A stretch of 63,106 nucleotides of DNA, counting the filler, from Octopus bimaculoides (taxonomy: Eukaryota), in NCBI RefSeq assembly GCF_001194135.2. It is 5 parts of 5 records of this genome, joined end to end, with 100 filler letters (N's around TTAATTAATTAA, not from the genome) between each part and the next. Parts side by side here need not be neighbours in the genome. Positions count along the whole stretch, not along the records: positions 56,575 to 63,106 come from NC_069007.1; 4 more parts are not named here. One strand, given 5' to 3'. Position numbers and translations under genes: made by a program. Positions within the stretch are counted from its first letter, which is position 1. Each line of letters opens with the position of its first letter. This document shows positions 56,201 to 63,106 of the stretch, piece by piece. The notes beneath the pieces were generated by a model. The model was not told the origin of the DNA. It searched no databases and saw only the letters and a program-made list of their open reading frames with translations.

Positions 56201-56629
56201 GTGAACATGACGCTAGCTGTCAGATCGTTCTCTACAGGTTTAAAATCTTCAACTTCAAGGCCATCCCATCCGTCCGTCTTGGTTTGAATTTTGTAGCAGC
56301 TGGTAGATTCCTGTTGCTTACTGCCAGTGAACTAACGGAGACAACACTTGAGTATCACCCGAGGAAACACAACTGATCTCATTATGCAAACAAACAGTTG
56401 CATAATCAAAAATAACTATCCAACCGTACTTCTTGTTGACCAATTTCTCCAATATATATATATATATATATATANNNNNNNNNNNNNNNNNNNNNNNNNN
56501 NNNNNNNNNNNNNNNNNNTTAATTAATTAANNNNNNNNNNNNNNNNNNNNNNNNNNNNNNNNNNNNNNNNNNNNGAAAAGACAACAAAAGAAAGAAAAAG
56601 ACCTCGATATTATGTAAATAGAGAAATTT

Positions 56630-56880
56630 ATCTGTAAAAATATGTGACAATTATTTGGTAGCCATGATAAAACTCCGAGTTTTGGATGCCGGGGTGGGAA
56701 CCCACGCCTGTCTTAATAACGGTCAACCACACAGAAAATTCCCTTTGTTTAACGGTCATTTTTCACAGGAATTTTCAATGGCCAGATAACTGAAGAGATG
56801 TTAGTGTGGGTTCCCACCCCAGCATCCGAAACTCAGAGTTTTATCATGGCTACCGAATAAGTGTCACATATTATTTACAG

Positions 56881-56882
<2 letters not shown>
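56630..56882. mobile_element. Short element with ~76-bp inverted arms (56630-56705 / 56806-56882)
   Basis: atctgtaaaaatatgtgac...gggtgggaacccac is the reverse complement of gtgggttcccacccc...gtcacatattatttacagat. Confidence 0.85.
56781..56850 (+). ncRNA. Candidate type I hammerhead ribozyme
   Basis: GCCA-GATAA-CTGAAGA-GATG..CATC-C-GAAAC-TCAGA-GTT^TTATC-A-TGGC. Stem I is 9 bp with one bulge, stem II GATG/CATC, stem III AACTC-A-GAGTT near-palindromic. Confidence 0.65.
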
Positions 56883-56912
<30 letters not shown>

Positions 56913-56941
56913 AAAATTCAGGTCAGTAGCAGAGGTCATAC

Positions 56942-56962
56942 TTGGTTCTCCCACAACATGTT
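56942..56962 (-). CDS. Probable 21-nt micro-exon, phase 1/1, (E)HVVGEP
   Basis: ctttagtcattatag|aacatgttgtgggagaaccaa|gtatga; open in frame with the upstream exons but has no paralogue. Confidence 0.45.
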
Positions 56963-57239
56963 CTATAATGACTAAAGTATCTCTTTAAACTTTTCTTGTC
57001 TCTTGTTGAGGCCATATAAGATGGGTTAATTTCAGTATCATTTGGGAAGTTCCCATCATCTCCATACATATTTATTTAGAATTTTATGGGCATTTCTTAC
57101 AGCCAAACACGCACACCTATAAACACCGATACTTTTAATTATAACAAAAACCATCTTTTTTGCAAGCTGAAACACCTGTCACAGAATAACTAATTGTTTT
57201 TAGTAATTCTTTCGTTAATAAAGCAAAAAATATATTTAC

Positions 57240-57275
57240 CTGTTGAAGAAATAGATGTTCCAGATACTATGGGCC
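57240..57275 (-). CDS. 36-nt micro-exon, phase 1/1, (G)PIVSGTSISST
   Basis: acttttttgcag|ggcccatagtatctggaacatctatttcttcaacag|gtaaat; paralogous to 61385-61420. Confidence 0.8.
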
Positions 57276-57513
57276 CTGCAAAAAAGTATAGATATTTTTG
57301 TATTATAAATTCCTATATTCTTTAAAACTGATACAAATATTTAATCTGTCATATGCTTACTTTTAAATATCATTGGGATTAAATAGATAAAAGAGATTAC
57401 AAAAACAGTTTTGATATTTATTTTTGCATAATATACGTTGTTTTCCCTCAGATATTTAAATTAAAACTTTCAGGTTAAGGGGGGCTTAAACAGTATCCAT
57501 TGATTTGTTAGAT

Positions 57514-58195
57514 CCAGGGGAGGGCTGGAAAAAAGTTCAATGGTTGGCTATGAAGGAGAGATGCTAGAGCTGTAAAATCTTGCTTGCACTAATTCCTTCT
57601 TCATTAAGAATTGCATTGTTTCCTTCAGGTAAAGTGATATCTGATAGTTCAGAGATTTCAAAAGCAACTAGTGGCGACTTCTCTTGAAAAATGGATAAAA
57701 TTTGGCATCGTGCCTGTTATGAAGTCCCTGCAGGAAAAGGGATTAGTTCCCAATGACATTCATGCTGACATAGTTGCAAAATAAGGGAAGACACTCAAGT
57801 TTTATCGATAGTGCAAAATTTGGAGCTGAATTTAGAATGGGAAGGGTGAGTCTTGAAGACGACTCAATGTCTGAATGTCCCACAACTCCTATCACTGAGG
57901 AAAGCACTAATTGTGTCCAGCACATTGTGATGGATGACAGATGACTGACTATAAATCAAATGGCCAATGATATTAGCATATCCCATGAGAGAGTTGGGAA
58001 TATTCTGCACAATGAAATTGGCATGATGCAAATTTCTGCTCTGTGGGTTCCATGTCTTCTGACACCTGATCAAAAGTGCACCAAACTGATCACATCACAG
58101 AAAAAGCTGACATTGTTTGAGGTAGATCCAGCTGGTTTCCTTGAACGTTTCCTAAGCCAGGATAGGTGTTGGCTCCATCACCTTGAACCAGAGAT

Positions 58196-58234
<39 letters not shown>

Positions 58235-58700
58235 AAAAGAGAGAGAATCCATGCAGTGGAAACGTCCCTCCTTTGCTCCAAAGAAGGCCAAGTTTGCTTC
58301 ATCCGTAGGGAAGCTGAAGACCTCAGTTTATAAGGATGCAAAAGGCATTGTGCTTTTTGACTATGTTCAGAAGGGCCACACCATCAATGGAGAGTACTAT
58401 GCCAACTTACTGAGACAGTTATGAAAGGTTATCAAGTCCAAACACCCAAAAAAACTGACGGAAAGGGTTTTGTTTCATCAGATACAAGTCTTAGGTTTCA
58501 ATGACTGCTATGCATGACTGGTTTTGAACTGGTTGATTACCCTCCTTATTCTCTTGATTTGGTCCCCTTCTGCCTATCACCTGTTCCCCAAAACAAAAAA
58601 CACCCGGCTAGGAAACAGTATCTCAGTGATGATGATGTTATATCTGCTGTTGAGGACTTTTTTGACAATGGGATGAAAGCTTTTTCACCAACAGGATCCA
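57514..58700 (+). mobile_element. Mariner-family transposon relic, copy 2, with internal (GATA)n
   Basis: Same family as 52985-54006; ISISHERVGNILHNE, WVP.LLT.DQK and GHTINGEYYANLLRQL remnants. Confidence 0.85.
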
Positions 58701-58838
58701 AGTACTGCTACACTATTGTTTCTTTTAGATTGTATCAACCTAACTGAAACTAACCCCAAACTGATAAATTATGTTCTGTGACAGACAAGGTAAACATAGA
58801 CACTTAGTGTGGAATTGTTTAGTATTAAATTTACAAAC

Positions 58839-58874
58839 CTGCTGAAGAAACTGTTGGAGTAGCTATGCTTGCAG
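58839..58874 (-). CDS. 36-nt micro-exon, phase 1/1, (A)ASIATPTVSSA
   Basis: atttctcttttgcag|ctgcaagcatagctactccaacagtttcttcagcag|gtttgt; same TCTTCAGCAG end as 62356-62391. Confidence 0.8.
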
Positions 58875-58937
58875 CTGCAAAAGAGAAATAATTAATTTGC
58901 ATTAAAAGAGTTTTACACAGTTAATAATTACTTAAAT

Positions 58938-59199
58938 TAAAATAAAATAAATGTGCCCTTTTAAAGCCTAGCCAGGCTCATGGGCCCGGTTTCCCGGTTT
59001 CTATGGCGTATGTGTTCCCCACCTGGATGGGACGCCAGTATGTCGCAGGGTTGCTTATTTTTGCCAGCTGAGTGGACTGGAGCAACGTGAAATGAAGTGC
59101 TTTGCTCAAGAACACAGCGCGTCGCCCGGTCCAGGAATCGAAACCACAATCTTACGATCATGATGCTGACACCCTAACCACTAAGCCATGTGCCTCCAC
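58938..59199 (-). mobile_element. SINE family D, full length, with 12-bp target-site duplication
   Basis: aattacttaaat at 58926-58937 and 59200-59211, a (TAAAA)n tail and a tRNA-like head. Confidence 0.92.
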
Positions 59200-59831
59200 A
59201 ATTACTTAAATATTCACTATATAATTATGTAGACATTTATTATTAGAAAAGATTTTATTAAATAATATGGTATTCATAAAATATATTATACATGATAAAT
59301 CAATATTTCTAGTGAATATTTGTATTTTTTAAAAATTAATGTTTAAACAATCCAATTTTATTATATATCACAGAACCATTATTATTCATGATATTTTCAA
59401 TGATGAATATTAGTACTCTGAAGGTATGAAATGTTTAAATATAATCTTTTTGCAACTGGTATGATATGTGTCTCTATAACACATCTACAACGATATCTTT
59501 GATTAAAACTTTCACTGTCACACTGTCCTTTGTACTGTAATCTTAAGAATTCCTACTTTATTGAAATAACAATACATGTAGCATGTCTTCGAAAATACAA
59601 TCGTCCATCACACATTCATTCAGTATTTTAGGAATGTATTATTCTACATATTTTATACAAATGTCGTGATTCTTCCATTTTATTCTACAATTTTTGTACA
59701 TCATCATCATCATCATCTATGCATCTTCTATACAAGACTTATTAAAAAAAAGAACTCAAATTATATTTAAAATCAATACATATAGTTAGAATATTAAGAC
59801 ATTTTGTTTGTTGATATTAAAATTTCCATAC

Positions 59832-59861
59832 CAGTTTCAGGACCTTTTGAACCAGTTATCC
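59832..59861 (-). CDS. 30-nt micro-exon, phase 1/1, (G)ITGSKGPET
   Basis: ttctttgattacag|ggataactggttcaaaaggtcctgaaactg|gtatgg. Confidence 0.75.
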
Positions 59862-60566
59862 CTGTAATCAAAGAATAAATATCCATTTACTTTCTATTAT
59901 ACAACACTTAAAATCAGTATGTGTTACAAAAACAAATTACTCTATTGTGTACATATTTGTGCAAATGTGGAAAATAATATTGCATATTGAAAGTAAAAAT
60001 ATCTTGATCTTTTGACATATGAACAGAACATTGGAATCACAGGAAGGTTCTCAGATCCATCTTGAGCATGATCTAAAGACACACCCACTCATATGCATGC
60101 ATGCATGCGCACACACACGTGCACATACACATGCACATATACACATGCACATACACACACACAAGTGTGTGTGAGTATATTTTATCTTTGAATTTGTTTC
60201 ACAAGATTCATGATGTGAAATAGAATGTTTAATCAGATGGTGTTGGATCTCGTTAGGGTCATTTCACAATATAGAAGCGTGTGTACTGACCCTACTTCAT
60301 TTCCTTTTTTGTTATTATTTGTCAACTACTGTAGACATAAATTGGTTAAAATCCTGCTCAAAGAATTCAAAGGATCCTGATATGATGAGCATTTTGTCTT
60401 CACAGATGAATTCAACATAAAGGAAATGAAAAGAACCAAGGTATAAACCAAGATTTCACCACTACTCTCATGTTGTAGAATATGGTCAATTGTAGTTATA
60501 ATCAGTATATATATATAGATTTAGAATATAAAGACATTTCATATATTGATAATAAAACTTACATAC

Positions 60567-60596
60567 CAGTGTGAGGGCGTATAGGACCAGTTACCT
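60567..60596 (-). CDS. 30-nt micro-exon, phase 1/1, (E)VTGPIRPHT
   Basis: tgctttgattacag|aggtaactggtcctatacgccctcacactg|gtatgt; duplicate of 59832-59861 including the upstream intron. Confidence 0.75.
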
Positions 60597-60997
60597 CTGT
60601 AATCAAAGCATAAATATCCATTTACTTCCAATCACATAACATCTATGCTGTGTTAGAAAAACAAATTACCATCTAATGGAAATATTTCAGTAAATGTAGA
60701 AAATTATACTGAATGCTTAAAACTAAAAACATATCTGTTTAAATGTAATAGTGAATGTATAATGAATGAATTAACTGCTGACATATTCAAAGTTTAAATG
60801 ATATTAGTCATTATATGTAATATGCTGAGTAAGAAAAGACAAACTAACCTATAGTCATCTTATGAGCAATGCATATATTTCTTGATTGTCCATGTTATCT
60901 ATTACATTAGAGTTTTGCTTTCAATTCCTCTATCTGAAAGTATCATCTTATTGTATAAATATGTATGCTACATGGTAGTCAAATGTGGGCATCAATG

Positions 60998-61337
60998 CAG
61001 TATTCAACTGGTACTGATTTTATCGACCCCAGCGAAATTTGAACTCAGAACATACCAATGGGCGAAATACCATTAAGCATTTTGTCCAGCATGCTAACGA
61101 TTCTTATTTCTTTATTGCTCACAAGGGACTACACATAGAGGGAACAAACAAGGACAGATAAACGGATTAAGTTGATTATATCGACCCCAGTGTGTAACTG
61201 GTACTTATTTAATCAACCCTGAAAGGATGAAAAGCAAAGTTGATCTCGGCAGAATTTGAACTCAGAACGTAACGGCAGACGAAATACCACTAAGCATTTC
61301 ACCCGGTGTGCTAACGATTCTGCCAGCTCACTGCCTT
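60998..61337 (-). mobile_element. Two adjacent SINE family B copies (about 60998-61100 and 61101-61337)
   Basis: Repeated gaactcagaac..gaaatacc..taagcattt..gctaacgattc blocks. Confidence 0.85.
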
Positions 61338-61384
61338 AAATACTTCCATTATAATAACTAAACAAACAGTAGAATTGTACTTGC

Positions 61385-61420
61385 CTGATAGAGTAACAGC
61401 GGTTCCAGATATATTTGGTG
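61385..61420 (-). CDS. 36-nt micro-exon, phase 1/1, (A)PNISGTAVTLS, with a GC donor
   Basis: ccattttgttgcag|caccaaatatatctggaaccgctgttactctatcag|gcaagt; encodes an N-I-S sequon. Confidence 0.7.
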
Positions 61421-61947
61421 CTGCAACAAAATGGCAATTTATTTGTATTATATATCATTTTTGTATCGTTAATAGCTAATATAGTTCTTCAATATATAGC
61501 ATGTATATACTTTAATCTTGGAGAAGATTTGATTAATAAATAATAANNNNNNNNNNNNNNNNNNNNNNNNNNNNNNNNNNNNNNNNNNNNNNNNNNNNNN
61601 NNNNNNNNNNNNNNNNNNNNNNNNNNNNNNNNNNNNNNNNNNNNNNNNNNNNNNNNNNNNNNNNNNNNNNNNNNNNNNNNNNNNNNNNNNNNNNNNNNNN
61701 NNNNNNNNNNNNNNNNNNNNNNNNNNNNNNNNNNNNNNNNNNNNNNNNNNNNNNNNNNNNNNNNNNNNNNNNNNNNNNNNNNNNNNNNNNNNNNNNNNNN
61801 NNNNNNNNNNNNNNNNNNNNNNNNNNNNNNNNNNNNNNNNNNNNNNNNNNNNNNNNNNNNNNNNNNNNNNNNNNNNNNNNNNNNNNNNNNNNNNNNNNNN
61901 NNNNNNNNNNNNNNNNNNNNNNNNNNNNNNNNNNNNNNNNNNNNNNN

Positions 61948-62283
61948 CGATCAACGGAACAGCCTGCTCGTGAAATTAACGTGCAAGTGGCTGAGCACTC
62001 CACAGACACGTGTACCCTTAACGTAGTTCTCGGGGATATTCAGCGTGACACAGTGTGACAAGGCTGGCCCTTTGAATTACAGGCACAACAGAAACCGGAA
62101 GTAAGAGTGAGAGAAAGTTGTGGTGAAAGAGTACAGCAGGGTTCGCCACCATCCCCTGTCGGAGCCTCGTGGAGCTTTAGGTATTTTCGCTCAATAAACA
62201 CTCACAACGCCCGGTCTGGGAATCAAAACCGCGATCGTATGACCGCGAATCCGCTGCCCTAACCACTGGGCCATTGCGCCTCC
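61948..62283 (-). mobile_element. SINE family C (young)
   Basis: Near-identical to 23610-23910. Confidence 0.9.
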
Positions 62284-62355
62284 ACTATGACAGAATAGAT
62301 AAATATAAATAGTGAAGACTTTCATTATAATAATTGTAGGGTTAAATTTACTTAC

Positions 62356-62391
62356 CTGCTGAAGACACAGATGGCTTAATCTCTTTTGTAG
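62356..62391 (-). CDS. 36-nt micro-exon, phase 1/1, (A)TKEIKPSVSSA
   Basis: gcttccccttttcag|ctacaaaagagattaagccatctgtgtcttcagcag|gtaagt. Confidence 0.82.
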
Positions 62392-62885
62392 CTGAAAAGG
62401 GGGAAGCAAACCATTTTATTATAAACTGATTTACACTGCTAACATTTATAGAAAACTTCAATGCTTTAGATTTACACTTTAATTCTTATATAAGATTTAA
62501 TTAACCAAACAGTAAGGGTTTAGTGAAAGAATAACATCTCAGTTTTTCCAGCAAATGACAATTTCAGGTTTTCTTTTAGTGGTAATGCTGTTTGTCAGAG
62601 AGCTATTATAATAATATTATTATTATAATAATATTAATATTCATGATATTGTCATTGATATGTAAGTTCAATATTAGAGTATTAGAATACATGAAAATGT
62701 TCACCAGGTTACAGAAAAATTTCATTTTGTCATCAGTCATGATATAATTCTTGATGGAAAAATATTAAAAAGAAAAAGGTGTACCTTTTTATAAGCTGGC
62801 CACAAATATCAAAAGATTCATTGTACATTAAGCTAAACCTTTTGTGTATATAGCTATATATATATAGCTATATATATAGCTATAT

Positions 62886-63106
62886 CAGGTTATGAAAGTT
62901 ACAGAGAGGGTCATAGCCCAACTAATTAGGGAGCGAATCAATTTAGATGAGATGCAGTTTGGGTTCGTGCCAGGTAAAAGCACTACTGATGCCTTATTTC
63001 TAGTGAGACAGTTGCAGGAGAAATACCTAGTTAGGATAAACCTCTGTACCTGGCTTTCGTTGACATGGAGAAAGCCTTTGACAGGGTCCCCCGATCCCTT
63101 ATCTGG
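62886..63106 (+). mobile_element. Young 5'-truncated RTE LINE, RT region (runs off the window)
   Basis: QVMKVTERVIAQLIRERINLDEMQFGFVPGKSTTDALFLVRQLQEKYL, one frameshift, then DKPLYLAFVDMEKAFDRVPRSLIW. Confidence 0.92.

What the first reader, a model, noticed from the sequence alone, without database searches (positions are those of the whole stretch)
56942..62391. Micro-exon gene: tandem symmetric 21-36-nt exons encoding a Ser/Thr/Pro-rich chain
Six or seven minus-strand exons (62356-62391, 61385-61420, 60567-60596, 59832-59861, 58839-58874, 57240-57275, probably 56942-56962) have good splice sites, lengths divisible by 3 and phase 1 at both ends. They join without stops: ATKEIKPSVSSA-APNISGTAVTLS-EVTGPIRPHT-GITGSKGPET-AASIATPTVSSA-GPIVSGTSISST-EHVVGEP. 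The pattern is A-B-C-C'-A'-B', showing exon and exon-pair duplication. Any subset can be skipped in frame. Schistosome micro-exon genes use this design to diversify secreted proteins; I do not know it described for cephalopods. The S/T richness and N-I-S sequon suggest an extracellular glycoprotein stalk (inference). The start, end and any exons in the N gaps are not visible.
Basis: partly seen in the sequence, partly recalled or inferred. Interest (0 to 1): 0.85.

Follow-up and report, generated by a model that had tools for sequence, protein, structure and literature searches.

The report
Tandem mini-exons encoding a Ser/Thr-rich spacer
Six very short, duplicated, frame-preserving exon candidates on the minus strand look like real coding exons for a Ser/Thr/Ala/Pro-rich flexible stretch of an unannotated protein, but nothing shows that they are shuffled by splicing as in schistosome micro-exon genes.

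Summary
Only one frame, phase 1-1, is open through all six. They are more than chance. A splice-site scan gives 12 candidates on the minus strand, including all six, against 2 on the plus strand. The exons show strong three-base periodicity (C at 38 of 68 second codon positions, A/T at 57 of 68 third positions; 0 of 20,000 shuffles reach it). They are GC islands in AT-rich introns. Under a neutral simulation the four diverged 36-nt copies keep splice dinucleotides, frame and length with probability about 5e-5 to 2.5e-3. The seventh exon (56942-56962) is not supported. The N gap lies inside the A-to-B intron, so it does not touch the frame, but it could hide an exon. No homologue, annotated protein or domain was found, although the database holds Octopus vulgaris annotation. 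Best reading: part of an unannotated gene whose low-complexity, probably extracellular spacer grew by tandem exon duplication, a design also known from tropoelastin. The micro-exon-gene analogy holds for exon layout only. Secretion, exon skipping and diversification are untested.

The parts
62356..62391 (-). Exon A, 36 nt, phase 1-1, peptide (A)TKEIKPSVSSA; acceptor ttttcag|, donor CAG|gtaagt
   Evidence: (acceptor 12.4, donor 12.8 bits)
61385..61420 (-). Exon B, 36 nt, phase 1-1, peptide (A)PNISGTAVTLS; GC donor CAG|gcaagt
   Evidence: (8.8 / 7.2 bits)
60567..60596 (-). Exon C, 30 nt, phase 1-1, peptide (E)VTGPIRPHT
   Evidence: (6.4 / 8.0 bits)
59832..59861 (-). Exon C', 30 nt, phase 1-1, peptide (G)ITGSKGPET; tandem duplicate of C with about 250 bp of shared flank
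   Evidence: (9.6 / 7.7 bits)
58839..58874 (-). Exon A', 36 nt, phase 1-1, peptide (A)ASIATPTVSSA; paralogue of A
   Evidence: (12.3 / 6.2 bits)
57240..57275 (-). Exon B', 36 nt, phase 1-1, peptide (G)PIVSGTSISST; paralogue of B
   Evidence: (9.4 / 8.7 bits)
56942..56962 (-).
   Evidence: 3.4 / 4.7 bits; flanks not homologous to C/C'; equal-scoring false-looking candidates are common
61547..61947 (.). Assembly gap (401 N) inside the intron between exons A and B; a SINE-like repeat runs into it from the A side
60488..60732 (-). C duplication unit (exon plus flanking intron), homologous to 59759-60002
59759..60002 (-). C' duplication unit (exon plus flanking intron)

Best explanation
The piece is an internal fragment of a protein-coding gene on the minus strand that is absent from the annotated proteins searched. 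It carries an array of at least six tandemly duplicated cassette-type mini-exons (36-36-30-30-36-36 nt), all in phase 1-1.

Together they encode 68 residues: 35% Ser+Thr, 12% Ala, 10% Pro, 10% Gly, 19% Ile/Val/Leu, no Cys and no aromatic residues. This is a low-complexity, probably disordered spacer.

Shown:
- The array grew by unequal duplication of an exon with its flanking intron. An ancestral 36-nt unit gave the A and B types, the A-B block gave A'-B', and C gave C'.
- Each unit is a multiple of three, and each split codon is G|NN, so every duplication, loss or skipping event keeps the frame.
- Splice sites, exon length, frame and NCW-type codons (Ser/Thr/Pro/Ala) have been retained while the actual residues changed.

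Inferred:
- Selection acts on composition and length, not on exact sequence.
- The chain is a mucin-like, possibly O-glycosylated stalk or linker of a secreted or surface protein.
- The array continues beyond both edges of the piece.
For: - Coordinates, lengths and the single common open frame.
- Splice-site scores of 6-13 bits at all twelve sites, with strand asymmetry of 12 candidates against 2.
- Paralogy that includes the introns.
- Three-base periodicity: second codon position is C in 38 of 68 codons, third position is A/T in 57 of 68, chi-square 69.6, reached by 0 of 20,000 shuffles.
- Exon GC of 0.42-0.53 against 0.20-0.28 upstream.
- No indel in any exon, while flanks carry 3-11 gap columns per 80.
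- Neutral-drift simulation: joint retention in the four 36-nt copies has probability 5e-5 to 2.5e-3.
- Second codon positions are the most conserved and first positions the least (6 against 2 invariant of 12). This fits interchange among Ser, Thr, Pro and Ala.
- Introns are filled with decayed mobile elements, as expected for real introns.
Against: - There is no transcript evidence of any kind.
- No protein in 5.8 billion clusters shares even three 5-residue words with the joined peptide, although that database holds Octopus vulgaris annotation.
- The exhaustive HMMER search of 1.84 billion representatives gave only one compositional match, to a bacterial-type repeat protein.
- There is no Pfam domain.
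- The six exons descend from two or three ancestral units, so they are not independent observations and the shuffle p-value overstates the evidence.
- The codon-position and exon-versus-flank contrasts are individually not significant (p = 0.19 and 0.12).
- Exon bodies are no better conserved than introns, which a decaying or non-functional array would also show.
- The splice-site matrices are generic metazoan approximations of my own, not trained on this species.
- Ser+Thr at 35% is below the roughly 40% usually asked of mucin PTS domains (own knowledge).
Confidence: 0.62

Rival explanations
1. A micro-exon-gene-like diversification system. This would be a small secreted protein whose symmetric micro-exons are skipped in many combinations to produce variant isoforms. 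C and C' might be used as alternatives to each other.
For: - All six exons are symmetric, at most 36 nt, and separated by 0.7-1.6 kb introns. This is the layout described for schistosome MEGs (PMC10526429).
- Exon bodies diverge at least as fast as their flanks. In C/C' the exon is 70% identical against 88% in the 40 nt upstream and 80% in the 40 nt downstream.
- About 7 of the 9 C/C' differences change the amino acid (my count from the sequences).
- Adjacent duplicated exons of equal length and phase (C/C') are a classic substrate for alternative use (own knowledge).
- The GC donor on B may mark a weaker, regulated exon (own knowledge).
Against: - No signal-peptide exon, terminal exon or transcript is visible.
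- There is no similarity to any MEG or to anything else.
- The exon-versus-flank contrast is not significant (p = 0.12).
- The exons are large (30-36 nt) and repetitive, whereas most MEG exons are 15 nt.
- Symmetric phase-1:1 exons are also the rule in structural proteins such as tropoelastin.
- No convincing competing RNA pairing was found around C and C'.
Confidence: 0.12
2. These are not exons. The region is a locally duplicated AT-rich segment, or copies of an unrecognised repeat, that happens to carry splice-like motifs and an open frame by descent from one or two fortuitous ancestors.
For: - No transcript, homologue or annotation was found.
- The copies are paralogous, so shared features can be inherited and are not independently maintained.
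- Exon bodies are not better conserved than flanks.
- Polypyrimidine-AG and GT motifs are common in AT-rich DNA.
Against: - Retention of AG, GY, frame and exact length in four copies that are 47-64% identical is unlikely under drift (5e-5 to 2.5e-3).
- There is a sharp GC and second-position-C enrichment confined to the 30-36 nt between the splice sites in all six copies.
- Background 36-nt windows reach the same periodicity score only in trinucleotide runs.
- The plus strand has almost no candidates.
Confidence: 0.18
3. A decaying or pseudogenised exon array. It was once coding (hence the periodicity) and is now released from selection or only partly used. For example, B with its GC donor, or one of C and C', may be dead.
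For: - The gene is missing from the annotated proteins searched.
- The exon bodies diverge at about the rate of the introns.
- One donor has mutated from GT to GC.
- The introns carry many transposon insertions.
Against: - No stop codon, frameshift or lost AG is seen in any of the six exons.
- The GC donor keeps the full AG|GCAAGT consensus that functional GC donors show (own knowledge).
Confidence: 0.08

Closest known systems
Schistosome micro-exon genes (MEGs)
   Same: Runs of short exons that are multiples of three, separated by much longer introns. Any exon can be skipped in frame. The products are low-complexity and hard to annotate automatically (PMC10526429).
   Different: MEG exons are mostly 15 nt (range 6-81) and the proteins are small, with a conserved N-terminal signal peptide and hydrophobic motifs. 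Here the exons are 30-36 nt and obviously repetitive, no gene ends or signal peptide are visible, there is no sequence similarity, and there is no evidence of alternative splicing.
Tropoelastin gene design (all exon borders phase 1:1, cassette exons)
   Same: Every exon border splits a codon after its first base, so exons can be added, lost or skipped without changing the frame. The product is a low-complexity extracellular protein built from replicated small exons (PMC12554196).
   Different: There is no homology. There is no alternation of hydrophobic Gly/Val/Pro domains with Lys-Ala cross-linking domains. This chain is Ser/Thr-rich, with only 10% Gly and 10% Pro.
Mucin-type PTS (Pro/Thr/Ser) tandem-repeat domains and Ser/Thr-rich stalks of surface proteins
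   Same: The composition is dominated by Ser, Thr, Ala and Pro from NCN codons, with no Cys or aromatic residues. The repeats are degenerate and keep composition, not sequence.
   Different: Classical mucin repeats lie in one very large exon (own knowledge), whereas here each 10-12 residue unit is a separate exon. Ser+Thr is 35%, below usual PTS cut-offs. Glycosylation is untested.
Other repeat regions encoded one unit per small symmetric exon (titin PEVK exons, DMBT1 SRCR-interspersed Ser/Thr/Pro exons, spider Flag silk with its iterated exon-intron units); own knowledge, not tested here
   Same: Tandem duplication of an exon together with its intron gives a length-variable spacer. In Flag silk the repeated introns are more alike than the exons, as in C/C' here.
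   Different: The compositions, exon sizes and taxa differ. No sequence relationship was detected.

Membership tests
Schistosome micro-exon gene (MEG) class | Most of the coding region is made of very short exons whose lengths are multiples of three | tested here: inconclusive
   Six consecutive symmetric exons of 30-36 nt. The rest of the coding region lies outside the 6.5-kb piece.
Schistosome micro-exon gene (MEG) class | N-terminal signal peptide encoded by a longer first exon; secreted product | not testable with these tools
   There is no candidate first exon in the piece, no ORF of conventional exon size, and no route to the flanking genome.
Schistosome micro-exon gene (MEG) class | Sequence relationship to a MEG family or its conserved motifs | tested here: not met
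   No word-sharing candidate among 5.8 billion clusters. The only HMMER hit among 1.84 billion representatives is a compositional match to a bacterial-type repeat protein. No Pfam match.
Schistosome micro-exon gene (MEG) class | Protein variation produced by exon skipping in transcripts | not testable with these tools
   No transcript data are available. Only the arithmetical possibility is shown.
Phase-1:1 cassette-exon structural genes (tropoelastin type) | All exon-intron borders are in phase 1:1 | tested here: met
   Offset 2 is the only frame open in all six exons. All lengths are divisible by 3 and all exons end in G.
Phase-1:1 cassette-exon structural genes (tropoelastin type) | Alternating hydrophobic (Gly/Val/Pro) and Lys-Ala cross-linking domains; homology to elastin | tested here: not met
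   Composition is 35% Ser+Thr, 10% Gly and 10% Pro, with no KA or KP cross-link motifs. No homologue was found.
Mucin-type PTS domain | High Ser+Thr (about 40% or more) with Pro, in degenerate tandem repeats (threshold from own knowledge) | tested here: inconclusive
   Ser+Thr is 35% and Pro is 10% over 68 residues. The repeats are degenerate 12- and 10-residue units.
Mucin-type PTS domain | Dense O-glycosylation; secretory or membrane context | not testable with these tools
   No predictor is available and no full-length protein is known.
Tandemly duplicated alternative exons (C/C') | Adjacent exons of the same length and phase with recognisable sequence similarity | tested here: met
   Both are 30 nt and phase 1-1. 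The exons are 70% identical, with flanks up to 88% identical.
Tandemly duplicated alternative exons (C/C') | A mechanism or evidence for alternative or mutually exclusive use | tested here: inconclusive
   Including both exons keeps the frame, so nothing enforces exclusivity. Only weak AT-rich inverted repeats lie nearby. There are no transcripts.

The most novel reading that the evidence does not exclude
This is a cephalopod counterpart of the schistosome micro-exon strategy. It would be a lineage-specific, fast-evolving secreted protein whose tandem symmetric mini-exons are combinatorially skipped or alternated (C against C') to give many isoforms. It would have been missed by genome annotation because every coding exon is 36 nt or shorter.
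Probability: 0.12. Interest if true: 0.7.

Novelty: new member of a known kind. Interest (0 to 1): 0.38.

Why it matters
If the exons are expressed, this is a protein-coding gene, or a large part of one, that standard annotation has missed because every visible coding exon is 36 nt or shorter and the product has no homologue. Such arrays show how low-complexity extracellular spacers grow and shrink by exon duplication while staying in frame. They are also a blind spot of gene prediction in large, repeat-rich mollusc genomes.

The stronger claim is combinatorial splicing to diversify a secreted protein outside flatworms. That would be of wider interest, but nothing here supports it beyond the exon arithmetic.

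Tried and rejected
1. Word-indexed homology search with the joined peptide: no candidate.
2. Exhaustive HMMER search of 1.84 billion representatives: one hit at E = 1.1e-5 to a 3173-aa protein. It matched 12 stretches of that protein, which carries many tandem 'AVSGATITLTD...' repeats. I judged this compositional, not homologous.
3. Pfam on the joined peptide: nothing.
4. Calibration of those negatives: the mariner remnant in the A'-B' intron retrieves an annotated Octopus vulgaris protein, so cephalopod annotation is in the database.
5. Exact look-up of ten ORFs of the piece, hoping to reach overlapping public contigs, close the gap and extend the locus: none is on record.
6. Metagenome scans with the conserved C/C' acceptor flank and with the peptide: nothing.
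7. Rfam and tRNA scans of the piece: nothing at gathering score. The mir-297 type matches are the (TG)n microsatellite.
8. Search for RNA pairing that could make C and C' mutually exclusive: only weak AT-rich inverted repeats.
9. Collagen reading: rejected. C' contains three Gly-X-Y triplets, but its neighbours do not continue the pattern.
10. Elastomer reading: rejected. Gly and Pro are only 10% each.
11. Literature: no paper links micro-exon genes or this kind of array with cephalopods.
12. Codon-position conservation and the exon-versus-flank divergence test: the trends fit the explanation but are not significant.


Full report
**What is in the sequence**

I read the piece 56575-63106 on the minus strand. 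They are 62356-62391 (A), 61385-61420 (B), 60567-60596 (C), 59832-59861 (C'), 58839-58874 (A') and 57240-57275 (B'). Their lengths are 36, 36, 30, 30, 36 and 36 nt.

Each follows a pyrimidine-rich tract and CAG, and each ends in G. The donors are gtaagt, gcaagt, gtatgt, gtatgg, gtttgt and gtaaat.

All lengths are multiples of three, so one frame must serve the whole chain. Only offset 2 (phase 1 at both ends) is open in all six exons. It reads ATKEIKPSVSSA APNISGTAVTLS EVTGPIRPHT GITGSKGPET AASIATPTVSSA GPIVSGTSISST.

**The assembly gap**

The 401 N at 61547-61947 lie inside the intron between A and B. The number of unread letters therefore has no bearing on the reading frame, because A ends and B begins in phase 1.

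On the A side a SINE-like repeat, starting about 62284, runs into the gap. On the B side, 61513-61421 is homologous to the sequence upstream of B'. The ungapped A'-B' pair shows the same order and strand.

Two things cannot be shown: that the scaffold join is correct, and that no further exon lies in the gap. The non-transposon part of the A'-B' intron contains no good candidate, so by analogy none is expected.

**Is it more than chance?**

I scanned both strands with generic metazoan splice-site matrices. These are my own approximations, not trained on this species.

- At 6 bits or more for both sites and 12-60 nt between them, the minus strand has 12 candidates, including all six exons. The plus strand has 2.
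- The six exons show strong three-base periodicity. The second codon position is C in 38 of 68 codons. The third position is A or T in 57 of 68. The first position is a purine in 46 of 68.
- The base-by-position chi-square is 69.6, reached by 0 of 20,000 within-exon shuffles.
- The four 36-nt exons score 16-20 on a simple periodicity statistic. Background 36-nt windows average 12.0 with sd 1.6 and reach 18, the maximum, in only 9 of 5,646 windows per strand; the top ones listed lie mostly in trinucleotide runs.
- Each exon is a GC island, at 0.42-0.53 against 0.20-0.28 in the 100 nt upstream.

The exons are paralogues, so these numbers overstate the independent evidence. To allow for that, I asked how often four copies drifting neutrally to the observed 47-64% identity would all keep AG, GY, an open frame and the exact length. 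The answer is 5e-5 to 2.5e-3, depending on tree shape and divergence.

Flanks carry 3-11 gap columns per 80, while the exons carry none. Second codon positions are the most conserved and first positions the least (6 against 2 invariant columns of 12). This fits free exchange among Ser, Thr, Pro and Ala, but it is not significant alone (p = 0.19).

**Duplication history**

A self-comparison shows that the units include intron sequence.

- C/C' align over about 250 bp at 75% identity.
- A/A' align over 166 bp at 66%.
- B/B' align over 141 bp at 64%.
- B' also aligns with A. All 36-nt units are therefore one family, which split into A and B types before the A-B block was copied.
- C/C' is the youngest pair. 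Its flanks are more alike than its exon: 88% and 80% in the nearest 40 nt on each side against 70% in the exon.
- By my count, about 7 of the 9 C/C' exon differences change the residue. The contrast is suggestive only (p = 0.12).
- A third C-type exon after B' would fall at or beyond the piece's edge.

**The seventh exon**

The segment 56942-56962 scores 3.4 and 4.7 bits. At that level five other unclaimed candidates appear on the same strand, most of them inside transposon or SINE sequence. Its flanks are not related to those of C and C', and its peptide (EHVVGEP) departs from the composition of the others. I do not count it.

**Searches for relatives**

- The joined peptide shares fewer than three 5-residue words with any of 5.8 billion protein clusters.
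- It has no Pfam domain.
- In an exhaustive HMMER scan of 1.84 billion representatives it gives one hit, at E = 1.1e-5. The hit is a 3173-residue protein with many repeats of 'AVSGATITLTD...', which looks like a bacterial surface protein. I take the match as compositional.
- The negative has some weight. The mariner remnant in the A'-B' intron retrieves an annotated Octopus vulgaris protein from the same database, so cephalopod annotation is included.
- Exact look-ups of ten ORFs and two metagenome scans gave no way to extend the locus.
- There is therefore no transcript or homology evidence, for or against expression in the source species.

**What it most likely is**

My best reading, at confidence about 0.6, is an internal part of an unannotated gene. 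Its low-complexity spacer has 35% Ser+Thr, 12% Ala, 10% Pro, 10% Gly, 19% Ile/Val/Leu, and no Cys or aromatic residues. It is encoded one 10-12-residue unit per exon and has grown by tandem exon duplication.

The phase-1:1 symmetry and the constant G|NN split codon mean that any gain, loss or skipping of a unit is frame-neutral. A mucin-like, possibly O-glycosylated extracellular stalk is a reasonable inference from the composition and from the general link between phase-1:1 exons and extracellular modules (own knowledge). It is not shown.

**Rivals**

- Chance or repeat-derived pseudo-exons: 0.18.
- A micro-exon-gene-like diversification system: 0.12.
- A decaying array: 0.08.

**Comparison with known systems**

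The layout matches the schistosome MEG description: short exons in multiples of three and long introns (PMC10526429). The defining signal peptide, the small size and the splicing variation cannot be seen, and sequence relationship was tested and not met.

The same frame-neutral design is standard in tropoelastin. There all borders are phase 1:1, which allows cassette-like splicing (PMC12554196). From my own knowledge it also occurs in titin PEVK, the DMBT1 spacer exons and Flag silk. The design is therefore not unique to MEGs.

I found no paper linking such an array with cephalopods.

**Verdict**

The 'micro-exon gene' label is an analogy of layout only. I rate this a new member of a known kind, of moderate interest, chiefly as an annotation blind spot.

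Noticed in passing
window 57600-58745, plus strand (inside the A'-B' intron): A decayed mariner/Mos1-type transposon, antisense to the exon array. Its transposase reading frame is broken by stops and frameshifts. It matches Pfam Transposase_1 (E = 1.7e-12) and is 52-58% identical to fish and Octopus vulgaris Mos1-like proteins. An (AGAT)n microsatellite at 58192-58247 lies inside it.
   Followed up: partly
window 62900-63106, plus strand (upper edge of the piece): A fragment of a reverse transcriptase (RVT_1, E = 7.7e-7, motif FVDMEKAFDRVP) with one frameshift, cut by the edge of the piece. It is probably a LINE remnant, antisense to the exon array.
   Followed up: partly
window 61948-62284 and 58950-59199, minus strand: Two related SINE-like repeats (68% identical over 175 nt). 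Their heads look tRNA-like, with a box A-like TGGCCCAGTGG and a box B-like motif by my own reading. ARAGORN and Rfam do not call them. The first one is cut off by the N gap, which may be why the assembly broke there.
   Followed up: partly
window 61242-61321 and 61025-61104, minus strand (B-C intron): Two adjacent copies (76% identical over 80 nt) of a second SINE-like repeat (GGCAGAATCGTTAGCAC...GTTCAAATT...). I recall this type from octopus genomes, but I did not test that.
   Followed up: no
window 56607-56906: A 300-bp near-perfect palindrome (arms 74.5% complementary over 310 columns) with (AT)n at one end. It is a foldback or MITE-like insertion downstream of B', lying where a third C-type exon might have been expected.
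   Followed up: no
window 58755-58775, minus strand: A 21-nt symmetric candidate exon (HNLSVW) with good site scores (9.0 and 6.6 bits), 63 nt downstream of A'. Its acceptor is homologous to the ...ctgtcatag that precedes the SINE after exon A. The body has no counterpart there and is not Ser/Thr-rich. It is probably a pseudo-exon, but it could be an alternative exon.
   Followed up: partly
window 60094-60170: An imperfect (TG/CA)n-type microsatellite. It produces sub-threshold Rfam matches to mir-297, mir-466 and related families. These are artefacts of simple sequence.
   Followed up: yes
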